Shown here: one piece after another, positions 14,491 to 47,995 of the stretch
How positions within the stretch are numbered: position 1 is the stretch's first letter
Layout: each line of letters starts with the position of its first letter
Position numbers and translations under genes: made by a program
Notes under the pieces: generated by a model
Told to the model about the DNA's origin: nothing
Databases searched by the model: none
The model's input: the letters and a program-made list of their open reading frames with translations, nothing else
From: Ostrea edulis
Taxonomy: Eukaryota
DNA: 64,000 nt
Assembly: GCF_947568905.1 (NCBI RefSeq)
Contig: NC_079170.1
Span: forward strand, 71,920,001-71,984,000
Reading direction: 5' to 3'

Positions 14491-14783
14491 TTATAACATA
14501 GAAAATTTAATCATGTATTCAGGATAAGCTTGTGAATCCCGAAAAATCACAAAAGTCTGTGGAACAGCAATATCATCCACCACGGAATCGTAACACTGCA
14601 GGGTGGATCCACCACTCTTGTTCTCGGGAGGAACGATGAGATTGGGGGAGCCTTCCGTGAAACAGCCTGTCAAGACTCGGCAGAGATACACCACTCTCTG
14701 TCTCCCCTCCATATTCATGGCCGTATCCTCAAGGCTATGGGTCAAGGTCACATCAAAATACACCCCCTGGCCGAGGGTTTTAG
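14491..14783 (-). CDS. PARP14: ART domain terminal exon (GQGVYFD...RVLTG...YDSVVD...FVIFRDSQAYPEY)
   Basis: Acceptor gatgcag; QAYPEY C-terminal motif of the PARP14 clade; stop TAA at 14491-14493. Confidence 0.93.
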
Positions 14784-47600: not shown

Positions 47601-47995
47601 GCTGGGGTAAATAGAAAATCTGGATTTTTCATTTTCATTGCAATTACTCCACCAATCAATATGAAATGTTCAAATTATGTTACTGACAGGTTGATTTATA
47701 AGCATTTGACTGTAAAGATTACACTGAAATATACAGGAATGTCAATTTCCTGGGCGATCATTTATTTCTAAGTTGCTAAAATGGGCAGGCAGTATCAAGC
47801 TGACATTTTACAGTATCTCTTATAACGTGACAAACTGACAATTAGCCAATAAAATCTTGAATTATTCCAATATCTAACTTTGTATATTAACCATAAATAA
47901 TCATATCTATAGTGACAAATGCTATTTCTATGCAAAAAAAACAACCCTACAAAACCGGATCTGATCACACAGGACAAACCTGATGATTCTGACAT
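14491..47995 (-). CDS. PARP14: DED-containing PARP14-like protein, 21 coding exons, about 1799 aa: DED - TRADD-N-like? - coiled coil - 4xRRM-like - KH-like region - Macro - KH-like - WWE - ART
   Basis: Manually spliced exons (minus): 47980-47995, 46587-46745, 45253-45471, 44028-44321, 42523-42624, 42086-42204, 41900-41999, 39577-39747, 37482-37769, 34267-34392, 30537-30665, 29745-29972, 26485-28061, 25830-25974, 24294-24519, 23622-23872, 21407-21612, 19342-19747, 18220-18383, 16053-16233, 14491-14783. All are GT-AG, phases match, total 5400 nt. The first exon is the least certain (fallback ATG at 46686). Confidence 0.85.
14894..15970 (+). mobile_element. Helentron-associated non-autonomous element carrying about 5 monomers of a ~166-bp HindIII (Cg170-like) satellite
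   Basis: Head aacaagaggc...acatcgctcacctg; ~166-bp repeats containing aaacttgaatctgcactatgtcaggAAGCTTtcatg; GACA microsatellite tail. This architecture is known from oysters. Confidence 0.8.
16053..16233 (-). CDS. PARP14: ART domain exon (VERVQNRALFEQY...ELWHTAN...GFNRNF)
   Basis: Acceptor ccaccag, donor T|gtaaga. Confidence 0.92.
17662..18192. repeat. 39-bp minisatellite, about 13 copies
   Basis: Unit cacaagtatgaaaccccacaacaatactacattcctcag; starts about 30 bp inside an intron. Confidence 0.95.
18220..18383 (-). CDS. PARP14: ART domain N-terminal exon (PNHWSPMSDD...QEYTDI)
   Basis: P.hW.pM motif typical of mono-ARTs; acceptor catttcag, donor GTG|gtaagt. Confidence 0.9.
18762..18925. repeat. 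28-bp GACA-rich repeat in a HINE-like tail
   Basis: Unit gacggacaagtatgtctacagacagata, followed by ...ccccctcataactttgttagcgggg. Confidence 0.85.
19342..19747 (-). CDS. PARP14: KH-like + WWE exon
   Basis: RIKLYGLTKDV...VEWKRVFDDG...MLEIYFRK...FTADFSKMTLY; donor G|gtattt. Confidence 0.88.
20100..21410. repeat. ~21-bp minisatellite (about 60 copies) containing the exon donor junction
   Basis: Unit ctgtttttacctgtttctaat; minus strand reads attagaaACAG|GTAAAAacag. Confidence 0.93.
21407..21612 (-). CDS. PARP14: Post-macro linker / KH-like exon
   Basis: Acceptor cagttttag (phase 1), donor CAG|gtaaaa. Confidence 0.8.
21712..22895. repeat. 31/32-bp minisatellite with higher-order trimer
   Basis: Unit aactcatcagaaatacccaagcttaatattt with regularly alternating variants. 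Confidence 0.93.
22927..23553 (+). mobile_element. HINE/pearl-like Helentron non-autonomous element
   Basis: Head aacaagatgtgtttgtgaaacacaaatgcccc, internal ~140-bp repeats (caaggtca...aaaggtcttgtcacaaggaatactcatgtg), GACA tail. Confidence 0.75.
23622..23872 (-). CDS. PARP14: Macrodomain exon 3 (SIAIPAISTGVFNYP)
   Basis: Acceptor cattgaag, donor G|gtattt. Confidence 0.9.
24294..24519 (-). CDS. PARP14: Macrodomain exon 2 (VIHAVGPVW)
   Basis: Acceptor ctcactag, donor CA|gtaagt. Confidence 0.92.
25075..25750. repeat. 43-bp minisatellite, about 15 copies
   Basis: Unit gactacagttaactgggttttcctgacaggaattaatgcccct, with palindrome CAGTTAACTG. Confidence 0.95.
25830..25974 (-). CDS. PARP14: Macrodomain exon 1 (VVKHDLTNMDVDVIVNAADKGLKLEGGLA)
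   Basis: Macro motifs; acceptor gatttcag, donor G|gtctgt. Confidence 0.92.
26092..26435 (+). mobile_element. Degenerate tRNA-headed SINE
   Basis: agcttagtggttggagcgctcgcc...ggttcg head; 3' end aaattcttaaatgggacgtaaaacaa resembles 10440-10580. Confidence 0.55.
26485..28061 (-). CDS. PARP14: Large exon, KH-like repeat region of PARP14-type proteins
   Basis: 1577-nt open frame; acceptor atgaacag, donor CAG|gtatta; similar position and character to the PARP14 KH region. Confidence 0.88.
28806..29248 (+). mobile_element. Second, shorter copy of the same HINE/Cg170-like family (about 1 monomer)
   Basis: Same head (caagaggctcatggaccacatcgctcacctg), one AAGCTT monomer, gacggacggacag tail, ends tcaggtgagctaaa. 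Confidence 0.8.
29745..29972 (-). CDS. PARP14: RRM-like 3/4 exon
   Basis: TRSILVRNILDTTTEDCLSMHFQYRVNGG; acceptor acaacag, donor G|gtgatg. Confidence 0.88.
30053..30270. mobile_element. MITE-like element with GGCGGA(C/T)CCAG termini
   Basis: ggcggacccag ... ctggatccgcc inverted termini. Confidence 0.55.
30537..30665 (-). CDS. PARP14: RRM-like 3 exon
   Basis: IDPKTTQDGLENYLSNRANV...; acceptor gatttag (last unit of the 57-bp array), donor G|gtatga. Confidence 0.85.
   Translation of the reverse strand, partial: ELIPRQHKMVWRTICPTVLMSGSSTPYGARTTPEPSLLLHQT
30666..31622. repeat. 57-bp minisatellite (about 17 copies) containing the exon acceptor; continues at 32628-32690 beyond a TE
   Basis: Unit aaacttcctaaatcatataccatgtgtacatgtaaaatcaggattaagattagctta. 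Confidence 0.95.
31623..32627. mobile_element. PIF/Harbinger-type non-autonomous TIR element with TTA target-site duplication
   Basis: TIR gggctattccagaaat / gggctgttccagaaat; TTA at 31620-31622 and 32628-32630 restores the repeat unit attaagaTTAgcttaaaac. Confidence 0.85.
33143..33953 (+). mobile_element. HINE/pearl-like Helentron non-autonomous element
   Basis: Head aacaagatgtactgtgagcaatgctcac; internal ~150-bp tandem repeats; GACA/GACG microsatellite; end cccccc-loop-ggggggtataat hairpin. Confidence 0.8.
34267..34392 (-). CDS. PARP14: RRM-like 2/3 exon
   Basis: VADRVLGKEDHMLEGVKLEVKE...KAFVSG; acceptor ttttag, donor G|gtgaga. Confidence 0.88.
35462..35716. repeat. 64-bp tandem repeat, about 4 copies
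   Basis: Unit ttttgatgctttggtttaacattgtaacataggtcaacacattttgtttctgcttgtaactgta. Confidence 0.9.
36041..36350. mobile_element. Short TIR element with TTAA-like flanks (Kolobok-type?)
   Basis: Left end ttta|ggaggaaggatac; right end reverse complement ggaggaatgctac. Confidence 0.5.
36328..36810. repeat. 34/37-bp minisatellite, about 14 copies, made of the element terminus
   Basis: Unit gtttttctggtgtagcattcctccttaagccacg. Confidence 0.93.
37020..37278. repeat. 43-bp tandem repeat, about 6 copies
   Basis: Unit ggggtttatttcaatcatttatacagtgaatttcgtcggtacc. Confidence 0.9.
37482..37769 (-). CDS. PARP14: RRM-like 1/2 exon
   Basis: TLEVSGFKPETRGETLEDYFENDKSGG motif; acceptor ctttcag, donor G|gtaagt. 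Confidence 0.9.
37796..38012. mobile_element. TA-flanked MITE (tac.gtagatt...aatctacagta); related copies at 43554-43732 and 59725-59934
   Basis: Short imperfect TIRs tactgta/tacagta. Confidence 0.55.
39577..39747 (-). CDS. PARP14: RRM-like 1 exon (HSIKVSNLPPDALEEELKEYFERKQEHGGGPVKDV...)
   Basis: Hand translation; PARP14/NMI-type 'YFE..GGG.V' RRM motif; acceptor ctttacag, donor A|gtaagt. Confidence 0.88.
40555..41705. repeat. 29-bp minisatellite, about 40 copies
   Basis: Unit ccacacatctaacacacagcttggtcata. Confidence 0.96.
41900..41999 (-). CDS. Linker exon (VAFVLGTETEEQILGETTQSYMSQISMEKGSDM)
   Basis: Acceptor tttttgtag, donor G|gtgagt, phase 0-1. Confidence 0.75.
42086..42204 (-). CDS. 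Ser/Thr-rich linker exon
   Basis: Acceptor ctatggtag, donor CAG|gtagtg, phase 1-0; needed to keep the frame between its neighbours. Confidence 0.7.
42523..42624 (-). CDS. Coiled-coil exon (CYHANEIRNILKRQRALERQLDLAQQALLEAEK)
   Basis: Acceptor tctgattag, donor G|gtaaat, phase 1-1. Confidence 0.8.
44028..44321 (-). CDS. Alpha/beta domain exon, possibly TRADD-N-like
   Basis: Phase 1-1 exon ENGYQFIRFHVAGG...VFVAGIEPSNSLVVTLMV...; acceptor ttgacag, donor G|gtattt. Confidence 0.8.
44590..44955 (+). mobile_element. HINE/pearl-like element, related to 22927-23553
   Basis: Head aacaagatgtgtccgtgaaacac, poly-C, aaagatattgtcacaaggaatacacatgtg repeats. Confidence 0.65.
45253..45471 (-). CDS. DED, second part (GDGGLQKRTLASIESAIDFFTVLKEKLYLNRENLIFLQACLWNVGRRDLHRKCVEF...)
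   Basis: Not in the ORF track; translated by hand. Contains the DED RxDL motif (RRDL). Acceptor ttttaag, donor CAG|gtaagt. Confidence 0.88.
45472..45710. repeat. Compound tandem repeat containing 6 extra copies of the DED-exon acceptor
   Basis: caccttaaaatca(c/t)agacaaaa at 45469, 45522, 45551, 45579, 45630, 45659, 45687. Confidence 0.9.
45723..45904. mobile_element. Tc1/mariner-type MITE, same family as 513-691
   Basis: Shares ccatggatat...gaagtcccaaccactta...ttaccctcgatatctcgaatc...cccatcgagtt.gagataac...gtttgactgta. Confidence 0.75.
46587..46745 (-). CDS. DED, first part (LNNFLQRLADDVTDEDLHKLKALLH)
   Basis: DED-type helices 1-2; donor CACG|gtttgt. Confidence 0.8.
47980..47995 (-). CDS. 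Putative first coding exon (MSESS)
   Basis: atcATG context; donor CAG|gtttgt; phase 1 matches acceptor ctttgcag at 46746-46748. Confidence 0.5.

What the first reader, a model, noticed from the sequence alone, without database searches (positions are those of the whole stretch)
14491..47995. Death-effector-domain protein fused to a PARP14-like body: candidate ADP-ribose/RNA-sensing death adaptor
Seen in sequence: 21 exons splice with canonical GT-AG and matching phases into one ~1799-aa frame. It starts with a DED (LNNFLQRLADDVTDEDLHKLKALLH-GDGG...FFTVLKEK...LQACLWNVGRRDL, RxDL motif) and continues without a break into RRM-like, KH-like, Macro, WWE and ART modules. Established: vertebrate PARP14/9/15 have no death-fold domain, and DEDs recruit caspase-8/FADD-type partners. 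Inference: a chimeric immune receptor in which a PARP14 chassis (nucleic acid and ADP-ribose binding) is wired directly to DED signalling. The DED exons are absent from or fragmented in the ORF track, so automated reading would miss the fusion.
Basis: partly seen in the sequence, partly recalled or inferred. Interest (0 to 1): 0.9.

Follow-up and report, generated by a model that had tools for sequence, protein, structure and literature searches.

The report
Oyster PARP14-like gene with DED adaptor
The window holds one real flat-oyster gene in which a death-effector domain and a TRADD-N adaptor domain sit in front of a PARP14-like ADP-ribosylation enzyme. This gene is already in RefSeq and the same domain design was published for Crassostrea oysters in 2021, so it is a correct reading of a known kind, not a discovery.

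Summary
The window is Ostrea edulis chromosome OX387710.1. The minus-strand gene is RefSeq 'protein mono-ADP-ribosyltransferase PARP14-like' (XP_056001249.1, 1796 aa). That protein maps residue for residue onto 21 GT-AG coding segments between 50266 and 14491.

The N-terminus is a true DED: Pfam 47.8 bits against a cut-off of 35.9, and the AlphaFold model superposes on the FADD DED at 1.3 A. It runs into PARP14-type RRMs, a KH-like region, one macro1-type Macro domain, a weak WWE and an ART domain.

- The coding start is a split A|TG at 50266/46745, not 47995.
- Automated annotation did not miss the fusion. Four oyster RefSeq annotations carry it.

Kaur et al. [quoted passage not shown]

The DED-TRADD-N dyad is the best conserved part of the protein. 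The same dyad precedes RIG-I-like helicases and Mab21/cGAS-like domains, and the TRADD-N module also sits in STAND NTPase-ankyrin proteins. So it is most likely a shared docking module. Recruitment of caspase-8 or FADD is untested, and the FADD-type Phe-Leu patch is Ala-Leu here.

The parts
50266..50266 (-). Last base of the non-coding first exon. It is the A of the split start codon, followed by the donor GTTAGT.
   Evidence: The CDS range of XP_056001249.1 is 50266-14491. Sequence read. Exact mapping. The same split is present in Saccostrea.
46587..46745 (-). Exon 2. It supplies the TG of the start codon, a 29-aa N-terminal tail and DED helices 1-2. An in-frame internal ATG lies at 46685.
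   Evidence: The exon alone matches Pfam DED profile positions 2-27.
45253..45471 (-). Exon 3. It encodes DED helices 3-6 with the R99-R100-D101-L102 (RxDL) motif, plus the linker ending in 'CPKETP'.
   Evidence: The exon matches Pfam DED profile positions 28-81 at 34.5 bits..
44028..44321 (-). Exon 4, phase 1-1. It encodes one complete TRADD-N-type (NCOA6-clade) domain, aa 127-222, with an invariant Ser177 in the beta2-beta3 turn.
   Evidence: 80 homologues in the representative search. 17 of 39 homologues hit PF13820 and 10 of 39 hit PF20694. The model has a beta-alpha-beta-beta-alpha-beta fold. The top PDB hit is TRADD-N 1F3V, but weakly.
42523..42624 (-). Exon 5, phase 1-1. A charged, probably helical or coiled-coil linker, aa 225-258.
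   Evidence: It is 71-76% identical to Saccostrea.
41900..42204 (-). Exons 6 (42204-42086) and 7 (41999-41900). A poorly conserved Ser/Thr/Glu-rich linker, aa 259-331.
   Evidence: Also present in the Saccostrea protein P0001. About 50% identity.
29745..39747 (-). Exons 8-12 (39747-39577, 37769-37482, 34392-34267, 30665-30537, 29972-29745), all phase 1-1. This is the block of PARP14-type RRM domains, aa 332-645.
   Evidence: RRM_PARP14_3 scores 145.9 bits over 3 stretches and RRM_PARP14_1 scores 45 bits..
26485..28061 (-). Exon 13 (1577 nt). The KH-like middle region, aa 646-1171.
   Evidence: KH_PARP14_3 scores 32.9 bits against a cut-off of 28..
23622..25974 (-). Exons 14-16 (25974-25830, 24519-24294, 23872-23622). 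A single Macro domain of the PARP14 macro1 type, aa 1199-1318. The loop-1 Asn and Gly-Gly and the loop-2 Val-Phe are kept.
   Evidence: Pfam Macro scores 109.8 bits in 1 stretch. The best PDB match is PARP14 macro1 at 96.9 bits. Residue criteria come from PMC10221186.
21407..21618 (-). Exon 17. Isoform X2 uses an alternative acceptor at 21612.
19342..19747 (-). Exon 18. It encodes the PARP14 KH8-like domain and a divergent WWE-like domain (aa about 1501-1578).
   Evidence: KH_PARP14_8 scores 26.3 bits here and 35.9 bits in Saccostrea. The WWE-like part matches 1X4R at E = 0.0033.
19773..19835 (-). Alternative terminal exon of predicted isoform X3 (1469 aa). That isoform ends before the WWE and ART domains.
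   Evidence: P0083 mapping. Isoform list.
14491..18383 (-). Exons 19-21 (18383-18220, 16233-16053, 14783-14491). The ADP-ribosyltransferase domain with triad H1676-Y1708-T1776, followed by the TAA stop.
   Evidence: Pfam PARP scores 38.7 bits. PARP15, PARP14 and PARP10 structures match at E = 1e-29 to 1e-21. The triad is conserved across the oyster orthologues.

Best explanation
One Ostrea edulis gene (window 50266-14491, minus strand) encodes a 1796-aa protein. Its domain order is DED, TRADD-N-type domain, charged linker, PARP14-type RRMs, KH-like region, one macro1-type Macro domain, KH8, a weak WWE, and a mono-ART-type catalytic domain (H-Y-T).

Shown:
- The gene is the flat-oyster orthologue of the 'DED-TRADD-N dyad + KH/RRM + macro + ART' proteins described in Crassostrea by Kaur et al. 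2021.
- It belongs to the bivalve lineage-specific expansion of NCOA6-clade TRADD-N proteins.

Inferred mechanism:
- The DED-TRADD-N dyad is a common docking and switch module.
- Homotypic DED contacts would plug different sensor or effector bodies into one DED-based signalling assembly. Those bodies are this PARP14-like one, and RIG-I-like helicases and Mab21/cGAS-like domains in paralogous proteins.
- The PARP14-like body would contribute RNA binding, ADP-ribose binding or removal (macro1 type), and possibly mono-ADP-ribosylation.
- The likely setting is antiviral or cell-death signalling.

Whether the output is caspase activation is not known.
For: Single gene:
- XP_056001249.1 maps exactly onto 21 GT-AG segments.
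- The same fused model appears in RefSeq for S. cucullata (P0081, 1806 aa), S. echinata (P0084, 1786 aa) and C. virginica (P0093 and others).
- The dyad is the best conserved part of the protein. Against Saccostrea, the DED is 87-88% identical and TRADD-N 91-94%, compared with 71-72% overall.
- The split start codon and the head-to-head GNAT neighbour are conserved in Saccostrea.

DED:
- Pfam scores 47.8 to 50.6 bits against a cut-off of 35.9.
- The model has six helices.
- Foldseek matches FADD DED 9U6E with a target-normalised TM-score of 0.90 and rmsd 1.3 A.

TRADD-N:
- Homologues hit PF13820 and PF20694.
- The fold is RRM-like.
- The invariant Ser lies in the beta2-beta3 turn.
- The top PDB hit is 1F3V.

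Shared module: the same dyad precedes Mab-21 (P0018) and a RIG-I-like helicase (P0056), and the TRADD-N module sits in nSTAND3-ankyrin proteins (P0051, P0070).

PARP14 kinship: vertebrate PARP14 proteins are the next best hits, at about E = 1e-107. The macro1 key residues are retained.

Literature: PMC8195603 describes this architecture and the constant-dyad / variable-region model.
Against: - No transcript or protein data were available here. RefSeq models are predictions.
- The oyster protein's own exon-4 sequence does not reach any Pfam TRADD-N model at E <= 0.1. The structural match to TRADD-N is weak: E = 0.022, TM 0.36.
- The helix-2 Phe-Leu patch seen in caspase-8 DED1 and FADD is Ala-Leu, or Thr-Leu in C. 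virginica. Canonical FADD/caspase-8-style contacts are therefore not assured.
- ART activity is uncertain. The third triad residue is Thr, and the Gly after the catalytic His is Thr in all oyster orthologues.
- Predicted isoforms lacking the ART domain exist.
Confidence: 0.8

Rival explanations
1. The PARP14-like body senses RNA or ADP-ribose, and the DED then directly nucleates FADD/caspase-8 filaments to kill the cell. The protein would be a dedicated death adaptor.
For: - The DED is structurally closest to FADD and caspase-8 DEDs.
- The RxDL motif is present.
- Bivalves have FADD and DED caspases (PMC11463336).
- PARP14-annotated genes are among antiviral effector genes differentially expressed in oysters confronted with OsHV-1 (PMC12803857).
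Against: - The Phe of the helix-2 Phe-Leu patch is Ala here. This is the residue mutated in the FADD DED NMR entries 1A1Z (F25G) and 1A1W (F25Y).
- The DED never occurs alone in this family. It always comes with TRADD-N, and the dyad also sits on proteins with no obvious death role.
- No interaction or cell-death data exist.
Confidence: 0.2
2. The DED-TRADD-N dyad works like vertebrate DEDD2/FLAME-3 or PEA-15. It would be a non-apoptotic scaffolding or localisation module, for example nuclear/nucleolar targeting or kinase binding, that regulates the PARP14-like enzyme rather than signalling death.
For: - DEDD2 is the vertebrate protein that also combines a DED with TRADD-N (PMC8195603).
- The PEA-15 DED is among the best structural matches, with target-normalised TM-scores of 0.82-0.85.
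- The FADD-type Phe-Leu patch is absent.
Against: - Homologues match the NCOA6-type TRADD-N Pfam model most often, in 17 of 39 members.
- The dyad's other fusion partners (RLR, cGAS-like, STAND NTPases, HEPN) are immune-type proteins (PMC8195603).
Confidence: 0.15
3. Annotation artefact. Two neighbouring genes, a small DED-TRADD-N adaptor and a DED-less PARP14-like gene, have been merged by gene prediction and by the reader.
For: - All protein models are computational.
- The linker exons 6-7 are poorly conserved, at about 50%.
- DED-less PARP14 genes exist in oysters, for example C. gigas P0125.
Against: - There is a continuous frame with compatible phases and no stop across exons 2-8.
- Four independent RefSeq annotations in three genera give the same fused model.
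- The linker exons are retained in frame in Saccostrea and C. virginica.
- The partial Saccostrea model P0001 runs from the DED through three RRMs to the contig end.
- The architecture is published.
Confidence: 0.03

Closest known systems
Crassostrea DED-TRADD-N-KH/RRM-Macro-ART proteins (Kaur, Iyer, Burroughs & Aravind, eLife 2021, PMC8195603)
   Same: The domain order and content are the same. The C. virginica proteins (P0085 and P0093 to P0099) are 61-64% identical overall to the O. edulis protein, and 77-84% identical in the dyad.
   Different: This is a different genus. Pfam finds one Macro domain here, whereas the paper speaks of multiple macro domains. Neither has been tested experimentally.
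Vertebrate PARP14 (macroPARP, mono-ART)
   Same: Shared features are PARP14-type RRMs, KH3/KH8, a macro1-type Macro domain, a WWE-like region and a C-terminal ART with His and Tyr. Vertebrate PARP14 proteins are the best non-oyster hits, at about E = 1e-107.
   Different: Vertebrate PARP14 has no DED or TRADD-N (no PF01335). It has three Macro domains against one here, and the triad H-Y-L against H-Y-T here. The KH-rich middle region is much more divergent in the oyster protein.
Vertebrate DEDD2/FLAME-3
   Same: An N-terminal DED is followed by a TRADD-N domain in one polypeptide (PMC8195603).
   Different: DEDD2 belongs to a different TRADD-N clade and has no enzymatic body. It is nucleolar and binds cFLIP. 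None of this was tested here.
FADD and caspase-8 DEDs
   Same: The six-helix DED fold matches (rmsd 1.3 A to the FADD DED), and the RxDL motif is present.
   Different: The helix-2 Phe-Leu patch is Ala-Leu here. There is no death domain and no caspase domain. Partners are unknown.
Other bivalve DED-TRADD-N proteins (fused to RIG-I-like helicase, Mab21/cGAS-like, STAND NTPase-ankyrin)
   Same: They share a homologous dyad, at 25-41% identity and with the conserved 'PENGY...FHV.G...EPS.S' signature, placed N-terminal to a variable body.
   Different: The variable body is a sensor helicase, nucleotidyltransferase or NTPase rather than a macroPARP.

Membership tests
Death effector domain (DED, Pfam PF01335) | Score above the curated Pfam gathering cut-off | tested here: met
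   47.8 bits for the full protein and 50.6 bits for aa 1-235, against a cut-off of 35.9. The match covers aa 30-111 and profile positions 2-81 of 82.
Death effector domain (DED, Pfam PF01335) | Six-helix death-fold bundle superposable on known DEDs | tested here: met
   The AlphaFold model has pLDDT 85-97 over the domain and six helices. Foldseek matches FADD DED 9U6E_B at probability 1.00, target-normalised TM-score 0.90 and rmsd 1.3 A. PEA-15 and caspase-8 DEDs follow. This is a prediction, not a solved structure.
Death effector domain (DED, Pfam PF01335) | RxDL motif of the charge triad | tested here: met
   R99-R100-D101-L102. It aligns with 'RLDL' of caspase-8 DED1. L102 is nearly invariant across the 27 dyad proteins.
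Death effector domain (DED, Pfam PF01335) | Helix-2 hydrophobic Phe-Leu patch used by FADD and caspase-8 for DED-DED contacts | tested here: not met
   The oyster protein has K49-A50-L51 where caspase-8 DED1 has K-F-L. The position is A or T in all four PARP14-like orthologues and F in only 10 of 27 dyad proteins.
Death effector domain (DED, Pfam PF01335) | Homotypic binding to FADD or DED caspases | not testable with these tools
   This needs co-IP, yeast two-hybrid or filament assays with oyster proteins.
TRADD-N superfamily, NCOA6 clade (PF13820 / PF20694) | Sequence match to a TRADD-N profile | tested here: inconclusive
   The oyster PARP14-like module alone gives no hit at E <= 0.1. It is homologous by phmmer (E = 1e-10 to 1e-4) to modules of which 17 of 39 hit PF13820 (best E = 1e-4) and 10 of 39 hit PF20694 (best E = 6e-6). 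The Crassostrea orthologues were classified as NCOA6-clade TRADD-N by Kaur et al..
TRADD-N superfamily, NCOA6 clade (PF13820 / PF20694) | RRM-like two-layer alpha+beta sandwich similar to the TRADD N-domain | tested here: inconclusive
   The model has a beta-alpha-beta-beta-alpha-beta topology at pLDDT 80.7. The top Foldseek PDB hit is TRADD-N 1F3V_A, but only at E = 0.022, TM 0.36 and rmsd 6.6 A. Generic ferredoxin-like folds score similarly.
TRADD-N superfamily, NCOA6 clade (PF13820 / PF20694) | Conserved small-residue + Ser motif in the beta2-beta3 turn (Ser67 of TRADD) | tested here: met
   S177 is invariant in 39 sequences. It lies in the turn between strands 168-174 and 178-185 of the model. 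The criterion comes from PMC8195603.
TRADD-N superfamily, NCOA6 clade (PF13820 / PF20694) | Single copy at the junction between a death-like domain and a variable region | tested here: met
   aa 127-222 lie directly after the DED and before the linker and RRMs. The domain is encoded by one phase 1-1 exon.
PARP14-like macroPARP | PARP14-type RRM and KH domains | tested here: met
   RRM_PARP14_3 scores 145.9 bits, RRM_PARP14_1 45 bits and KH_PARP14_3 32.9 bits (cut-off 28). KH_PARP14_8 scores 26.3 bits (cut-off 27) here and 35.9 bits in Saccostrea.
PARP14-like macroPARP | Three tandem Macro domains | tested here: not met
   There is one Macro stretch, aa 1199-1318. It aligns best with PARP14 macro1 (96.9 bits) and less well with macro2 (61.2 bits).
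PARP14-like macroPARP | Macro1 residues needed for ADP-ribosylhydrolase activity: loop-1 Asn and Gly, loop-2 hydrophobic + aromatic | tested here: met
   N1200...G1210-G1211 and G1305-V1306-F1307 align with the same residues of human PARP14 macro1. The criteria come from PMC10221186. Activity itself was not tested.
PARP14-like macroPARP | WWE domain before the ART | tested here: inconclusive
   There is no Pfam WWE hit at E <= 0.1. aa about 1501-1578 align with the mouse PARP14 WWE structure 1X4R at E = 0.0033 and 20.5 bits.
PARP14-like macroPARP | ART domain with H-Y-[L/I] mono-ART triad | tested here: inconclusive
   H1676 and Y1708 are present. The third position, aligned with Leu in 'PKLFVVF' of PARP15, is T1776. 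The Gly after the His is Thr. Both changes are conserved in all oyster orthologues.

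The most novel reading that the evidence does not exclude
The DED-TRADD-N dyad lets an RNA- and ADP-ribose-reading macroPARP co-assemble in one DED filament with dyad-bearing RIG-I-like and cGAS-like sensors and with FADD and DED caspases. Oysters would then run an ADP-ribosylation-controlled, death-fold-based antiviral signalosome with no vertebrate counterpart. 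The ART-less isoform X3 would act as a built-in regulator.
Probability: 0.15. Interest if true: 0.65.

Novelty: already known. Interest (0 to 1): 0.3.

Why it matters
The value here is confirmation and correction rather than discovery.

- The gene shows that the DED-TRADD-N-PARP14-like design described in Crassostrea is conserved in Ostrea and Saccostrea.
- Its adaptor dyad is the best conserved part of the protein, which argues that the dyad is functional.
- Nobody has tested what such proteins do. The flat oyster suffers from Bonamia and herpesvirus disease, and PARP14-annotated genes are among oyster antiviral response genes.
- This gene is therefore a reasonable candidate for functional work on how invertebrates link ADP-ribosylation to death-fold signalling.

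Tried and rejected
- **Exon 4 against the 1.84-billion representative library.** It found no full-length protein directly. The best hit was a 579-aa partial Saccostrea model. The full-length orthologue was found only among that hit's cluster members.
- **Exon-4 family profile against PDB sequences.** No TRADD hit, so sequence alone does not bridge to the solved TRADD-N structure.
- **Foldseek of the isolated exon-4 model.** TRADD-N 1F3V ranks first but is not significant. I do not treat this as proof.
- **Logan contig L003 as transcript evidence.** It carries DED-, TRADD-N- and RRM-exon-like pieces side by side, but with a non-splice-site deletion, frame shifts and a remnant of intron. It is ambiguous (processed pseudogene or aberrant RNA of another copy) and I did not use it.
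- **The other Logan cluster members, P0088 to P0091.** They are unspliced genomic exon ORFs, not transcripts.
It has the right phase but is not used by RefSeq. The split start codon at 50266 is conserved in Saccostrea, so I rejected it.
- **Word-limited censuses with the dyad of Saccostrea and of C. virginica.** They returned only Ostrea, Saccostrea and C. virginica. This says nothing about more distant bivalves or C. gigas.
- **Literature search for Ostrea edulis + PARP14.** No papers.

Full report
**What is in the window.** 'LNNFLQRLADDVTDEDLHKLKALLH' is in an open stretch at 46818-46558. 'GDGGLQKRTL...ACLWNVGRRDLHRK' is in the next one, at 45472-45224. Taken alone, the first piece matches Pfam DED profile positions 2-27 (14.1 bits) and the second matches positions 28-81 (34.5 bits). 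They are therefore the two halves of one DED, split by an intron. Further minus-strand open stretches score as PARP14-type RRMs, a PARP14 KH domain and the PARP catalytic domain.

**Identity of the gene.**
- A search of the 1.84-billion-protein representative library with exon 4 (97 aa) gave a 90% identical Saccostrea cucullata protein, P0001 (579 aa, 'partial'). P0001 already joins DED, exon-4 module, linker and three PARP14-type RRMs.
- Its 90% cluster contains the full-length S. cucullata 'protein mono-ADP-ribosyltransferase PARP14-like' (P0081, XP_062585083.1, 1806 aa).
- Using P0081 as a handle found the same architecture in Ostrea edulis (P0083), Saccostrea echinata (P0084) and Crassostrea virginica (P0085). 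All of them have PF01335 (DED) in their precomputed Pfam lists.
- The O. edulis cluster holds isoforms X1 (P0086, XP_056001249.1, 1796 aa), X2 (1794 aa) and X3 (1469 aa).
- The locus encoding P0086 (GCA_947568905.1, OX387710.1) is colinear with the reverse complement of the window wherever probed. Its CDS range corresponds to window 50266-14491.

**Gene model.**
- An exact spliced mapping of P0086 onto the window reproduces every residue in 21 coding segments, all with GT-AG introns.
- Two linker exons, 42204-42086 and 41999-41900, lie between 42523 and 39747.
The A of the ATG is the last base of an upstream exon at 50266 (donor GTTAGT), and the TG follows the acceptor at 46745.
- The same one-base split is present in S. 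cucullata.
- Exons 3, 4, 5 and 8-12 are all phase 1-1. The TRADD-N-type domain occupies exactly one such exon. This is the pattern expected for modules assembled by exon shuffling.

**Domains of the spliced protein.**

| Domain | Residues | Score |
|---|---|---|
| DED | 30-111 | 47.8 bits (cut-off 35.9) |
| RRM_PARP14_3 | 3 stretches | 145.9 bits |
| RRM_PARP14_1 | 431-499 | 45 bits |
| KH_PARP14_3 | 854-901 | 32.9 bits (cut-off 28) |
| Macro (single) | 1199-1318 | 109.8 bits |
| KH_PARP14_8 | 1436-1496 | 26.3 bits (cut-off 27) |
| PARP catalytic | 1613-1793 | 38.7 bits |

- No Pfam WWE hit appears. However, aa about 1501-1578 align with the mouse PARP14 WWE structure 1X4R at E = 0.0033.
- The Macro domain aligns best with PARP14 macro1. 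It keeps the loop-1 Asn and Gly-Gly and the loop-2 Val-Phe. PMC10221186 lists these as required for ADP-ribosylhydrolase activity.
- In the ART domain, His1676 and Tyr1708 are present. The third triad position, which aligns with the Leu of 'PKLFVVF' in PARP15, is Thr1776. The Gly after the His is also Thr. Both changes are conserved in Ostrea, Saccostrea and C. virginica. Catalytic competence is therefore open.

**The DED.**
- An AlphaFold model of aa 1-235, built on 27 dyad homologues, has a mean pLDDT of 82.8 and six helices between residues 27 and 111.
- Foldseek against the PDB returns FADD DED filament structures first (9U6E_B: probability 1.00, target-normalised TM-score 0.90, rmsd 1.3 A). 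PEA-15 and caspase-8 DEDs follow.
- The RxDL motif is R99-R100-D101-L102.
- Caspase-8 DED1 has Lys-Phe-Leu in helix 2, but the oyster protein has Lys49-Ala50-Leu51. The PARP14-like orthologues have Ala or Thr at this position.
- From established knowledge, the corresponding FADD Phe25 is important for DED-DED association. It is the residue mutated in entries 1A1Z and 1A1W (titles). Canonical FADD-style contacts therefore cannot be assumed.

- Exon 4 (aa 127-222) has 80 homologues at E <= 0.001.
- In the longer homologues scanned, the module follows a DED at around residues 110-240 and precedes very different bodies. Examples are Mab-21/cGAS-like (P0018) and a RIG-I-like helicase with its C-terminal domain (P0056). 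In the nSTAND3 NTPase-ankyrin proteins P0051 and P0070 the module lies further in, just ahead of the NTPase domain.
- All 27 aligned dyads hit Pfam DED. 10 of 27 hit NCOA6_TRADD-N and 5 of 27 hit TRADD-like_N.
- With the module alone, 17 of 39 hit NCOA6_TRADD-N and 10 of 39 hit TRADD-like_N.
- The oyster PARP14-like module itself does not reach these profiles. Its assignment rests on homology to those that do.
- It also rests on its predicted beta-alpha-beta-beta-alpha-beta fold and on an invariant Ser177 in the beta2-beta3 turn. Kaur et al. describe that serine as the TRADD-N signature.
- Finally, TRADD-N 1F3V is the top, though non-significant, Foldseek hit.

**Comparison with what is known.**
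- Kaur, Iyer, Burroughs and Aravind (eLife 2021, PMC8195603) reported lineage-specific expansions of NCOA6-clade TRADD-N proteins in bivalves.
[quoted passage not shown] They report two such copies in C. gigas.
- They also propose the constant-dyad / variable-region logic, with TRADD-N as a switch and the death-like domain as the recruiter.
- The C. virginica proteins in the P0085 cluster are 61-64% identical to the O. edulis protein. The window gene is therefore an orthologue of a published kind and is itself in RefSeq.
- The vertebrate PARP14 orthologues retrieved as next-best hits (about E = 1e-107) carry no DED.
- I found no paper on this gene in O. edulis and no functional study of any such protein.

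**Is it one gene?** Five lines of evidence say yes.
- The frame is continuous with compatible phases.
- Four RefSeq annotations in three genera give the same fusion.
- The linker exons are retained in frame in other genera.
- Synteny with a head-to-head GNAT acetyltransferase gene is conserved.
- The dyad is the most conserved part of the protein. Against Saccostrea the DED is 87-88% identical and TRADD-N 91-94%, compared with 71-72% overall. Against C. virginica the figures are 77%, 84% and 64%.

Direct transcript evidence was not available. The Logan contigs in the cluster are unspliced genomic exons, and contig L003 is ambiguous.

**Mechanism.** The architecture and its conservation are shown. 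The rest is inferred.
- The dyad is probably a shared docking and switch module. It would bring a body that can bind RNA, read and remove ADP-ribose, and possibly write it, into DED-based assemblies.
- Other dyad-bearing sensors, FADD and DED caspases, which bivalves possess (PMC11463336), may be present in those assemblies.
- PARP14-annotated genes are among oyster antiviral effector genes differentially expressed in oysters confronted with OsHV-1 (PMC12803857). That statement does not identify this paralogue.
The missing Phe-Leu patch weakens it.

**Verdict.** The finding is already known, and interest is modest.

Noticed in passing
window 50266 / 46745 (minus strand); L001 10001 / about 12056: The start codon is split A|TG by intron 1, so a single coding base sits at the end of the 5' exon. 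The same split is found in Ostrea edulis and Saccostrea cucullata.
   Followed up: yes
window 50627-60266 (+ strand) and 4491-8309 (+ strand): A GNAT-type acetyltransferase gene lies head-to-head with the PARP14-like gene. About 360 bp separate its CDS start from the end of PARP14-like exon 1, which suggests a bidirectional promoter. The same arrangement is seen in Saccostrea. A BicD-family gene lies beyond the 3' end, on the opposite strand.
   Followed up: partly
window 40560-41712, 30663-31623, 20048-21412, 17651-18191, 25118-25757, 21719-22801, 14944-15782, 36328-36817: The introns are packed with long minisatellite arrays, with units of 21 to 167 bp and up to 64 copies. Two arrays abut splice sites: the 57-bp array ends at the exon 11 acceptor, and the 21/42-bp array ends at the exon 17 donor. 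Some produce long spurious ORFs, for example 31740-30520 and 18215-17580.
   Followed up: partly
window 19773-19835 (minus strand): Predicted isoform X3 uses an alternative terminal exon and ends before the WWE and ART domains. That would give a DED-TRADD-N-RRM-KH-Macro protein with no transferase. C. virginica also has predicted ART-less isoforms (P0085 and P0092).
   Followed up: partly
L003 (Logan ERR10659092 contig, 1345 nt), positions 398-1180: This contig comes from a copy 76-79% identical in nucleotide sequence. It carries exon 2-, 3-, 4- and 9-like pieces side by side almost without introns, with a 29-aa deletion not at a splice site and with frame shifts. It looks like a processed pseudogene or an aberrant transcript. 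Its flanks match window 53732-54891 and 58724-58794.
   Followed up: partly
P0086 aa 1676-1677 and 1776 (window exons 20-21, 16233-14491): The ART domain has the triad H-Y-T, and Thr replaces the Gly that follows the catalytic His. Both changes are conserved across three oyster genera. The domain may have altered NAD+ handling or be a pseudo-enzyme.
   Followed up: partly
P0018, P0056, P0051, P0070: The exon-4 (TRADD-N-type) module recurs in proteins with Mab21/cGAS-like, RIG-I-like helicase and HEPN-Ig-nSTAND3-ankyrin bodies. This is a combinatorial immune toolkit worth a systematic census in O. edulis.
   Followed up: partly
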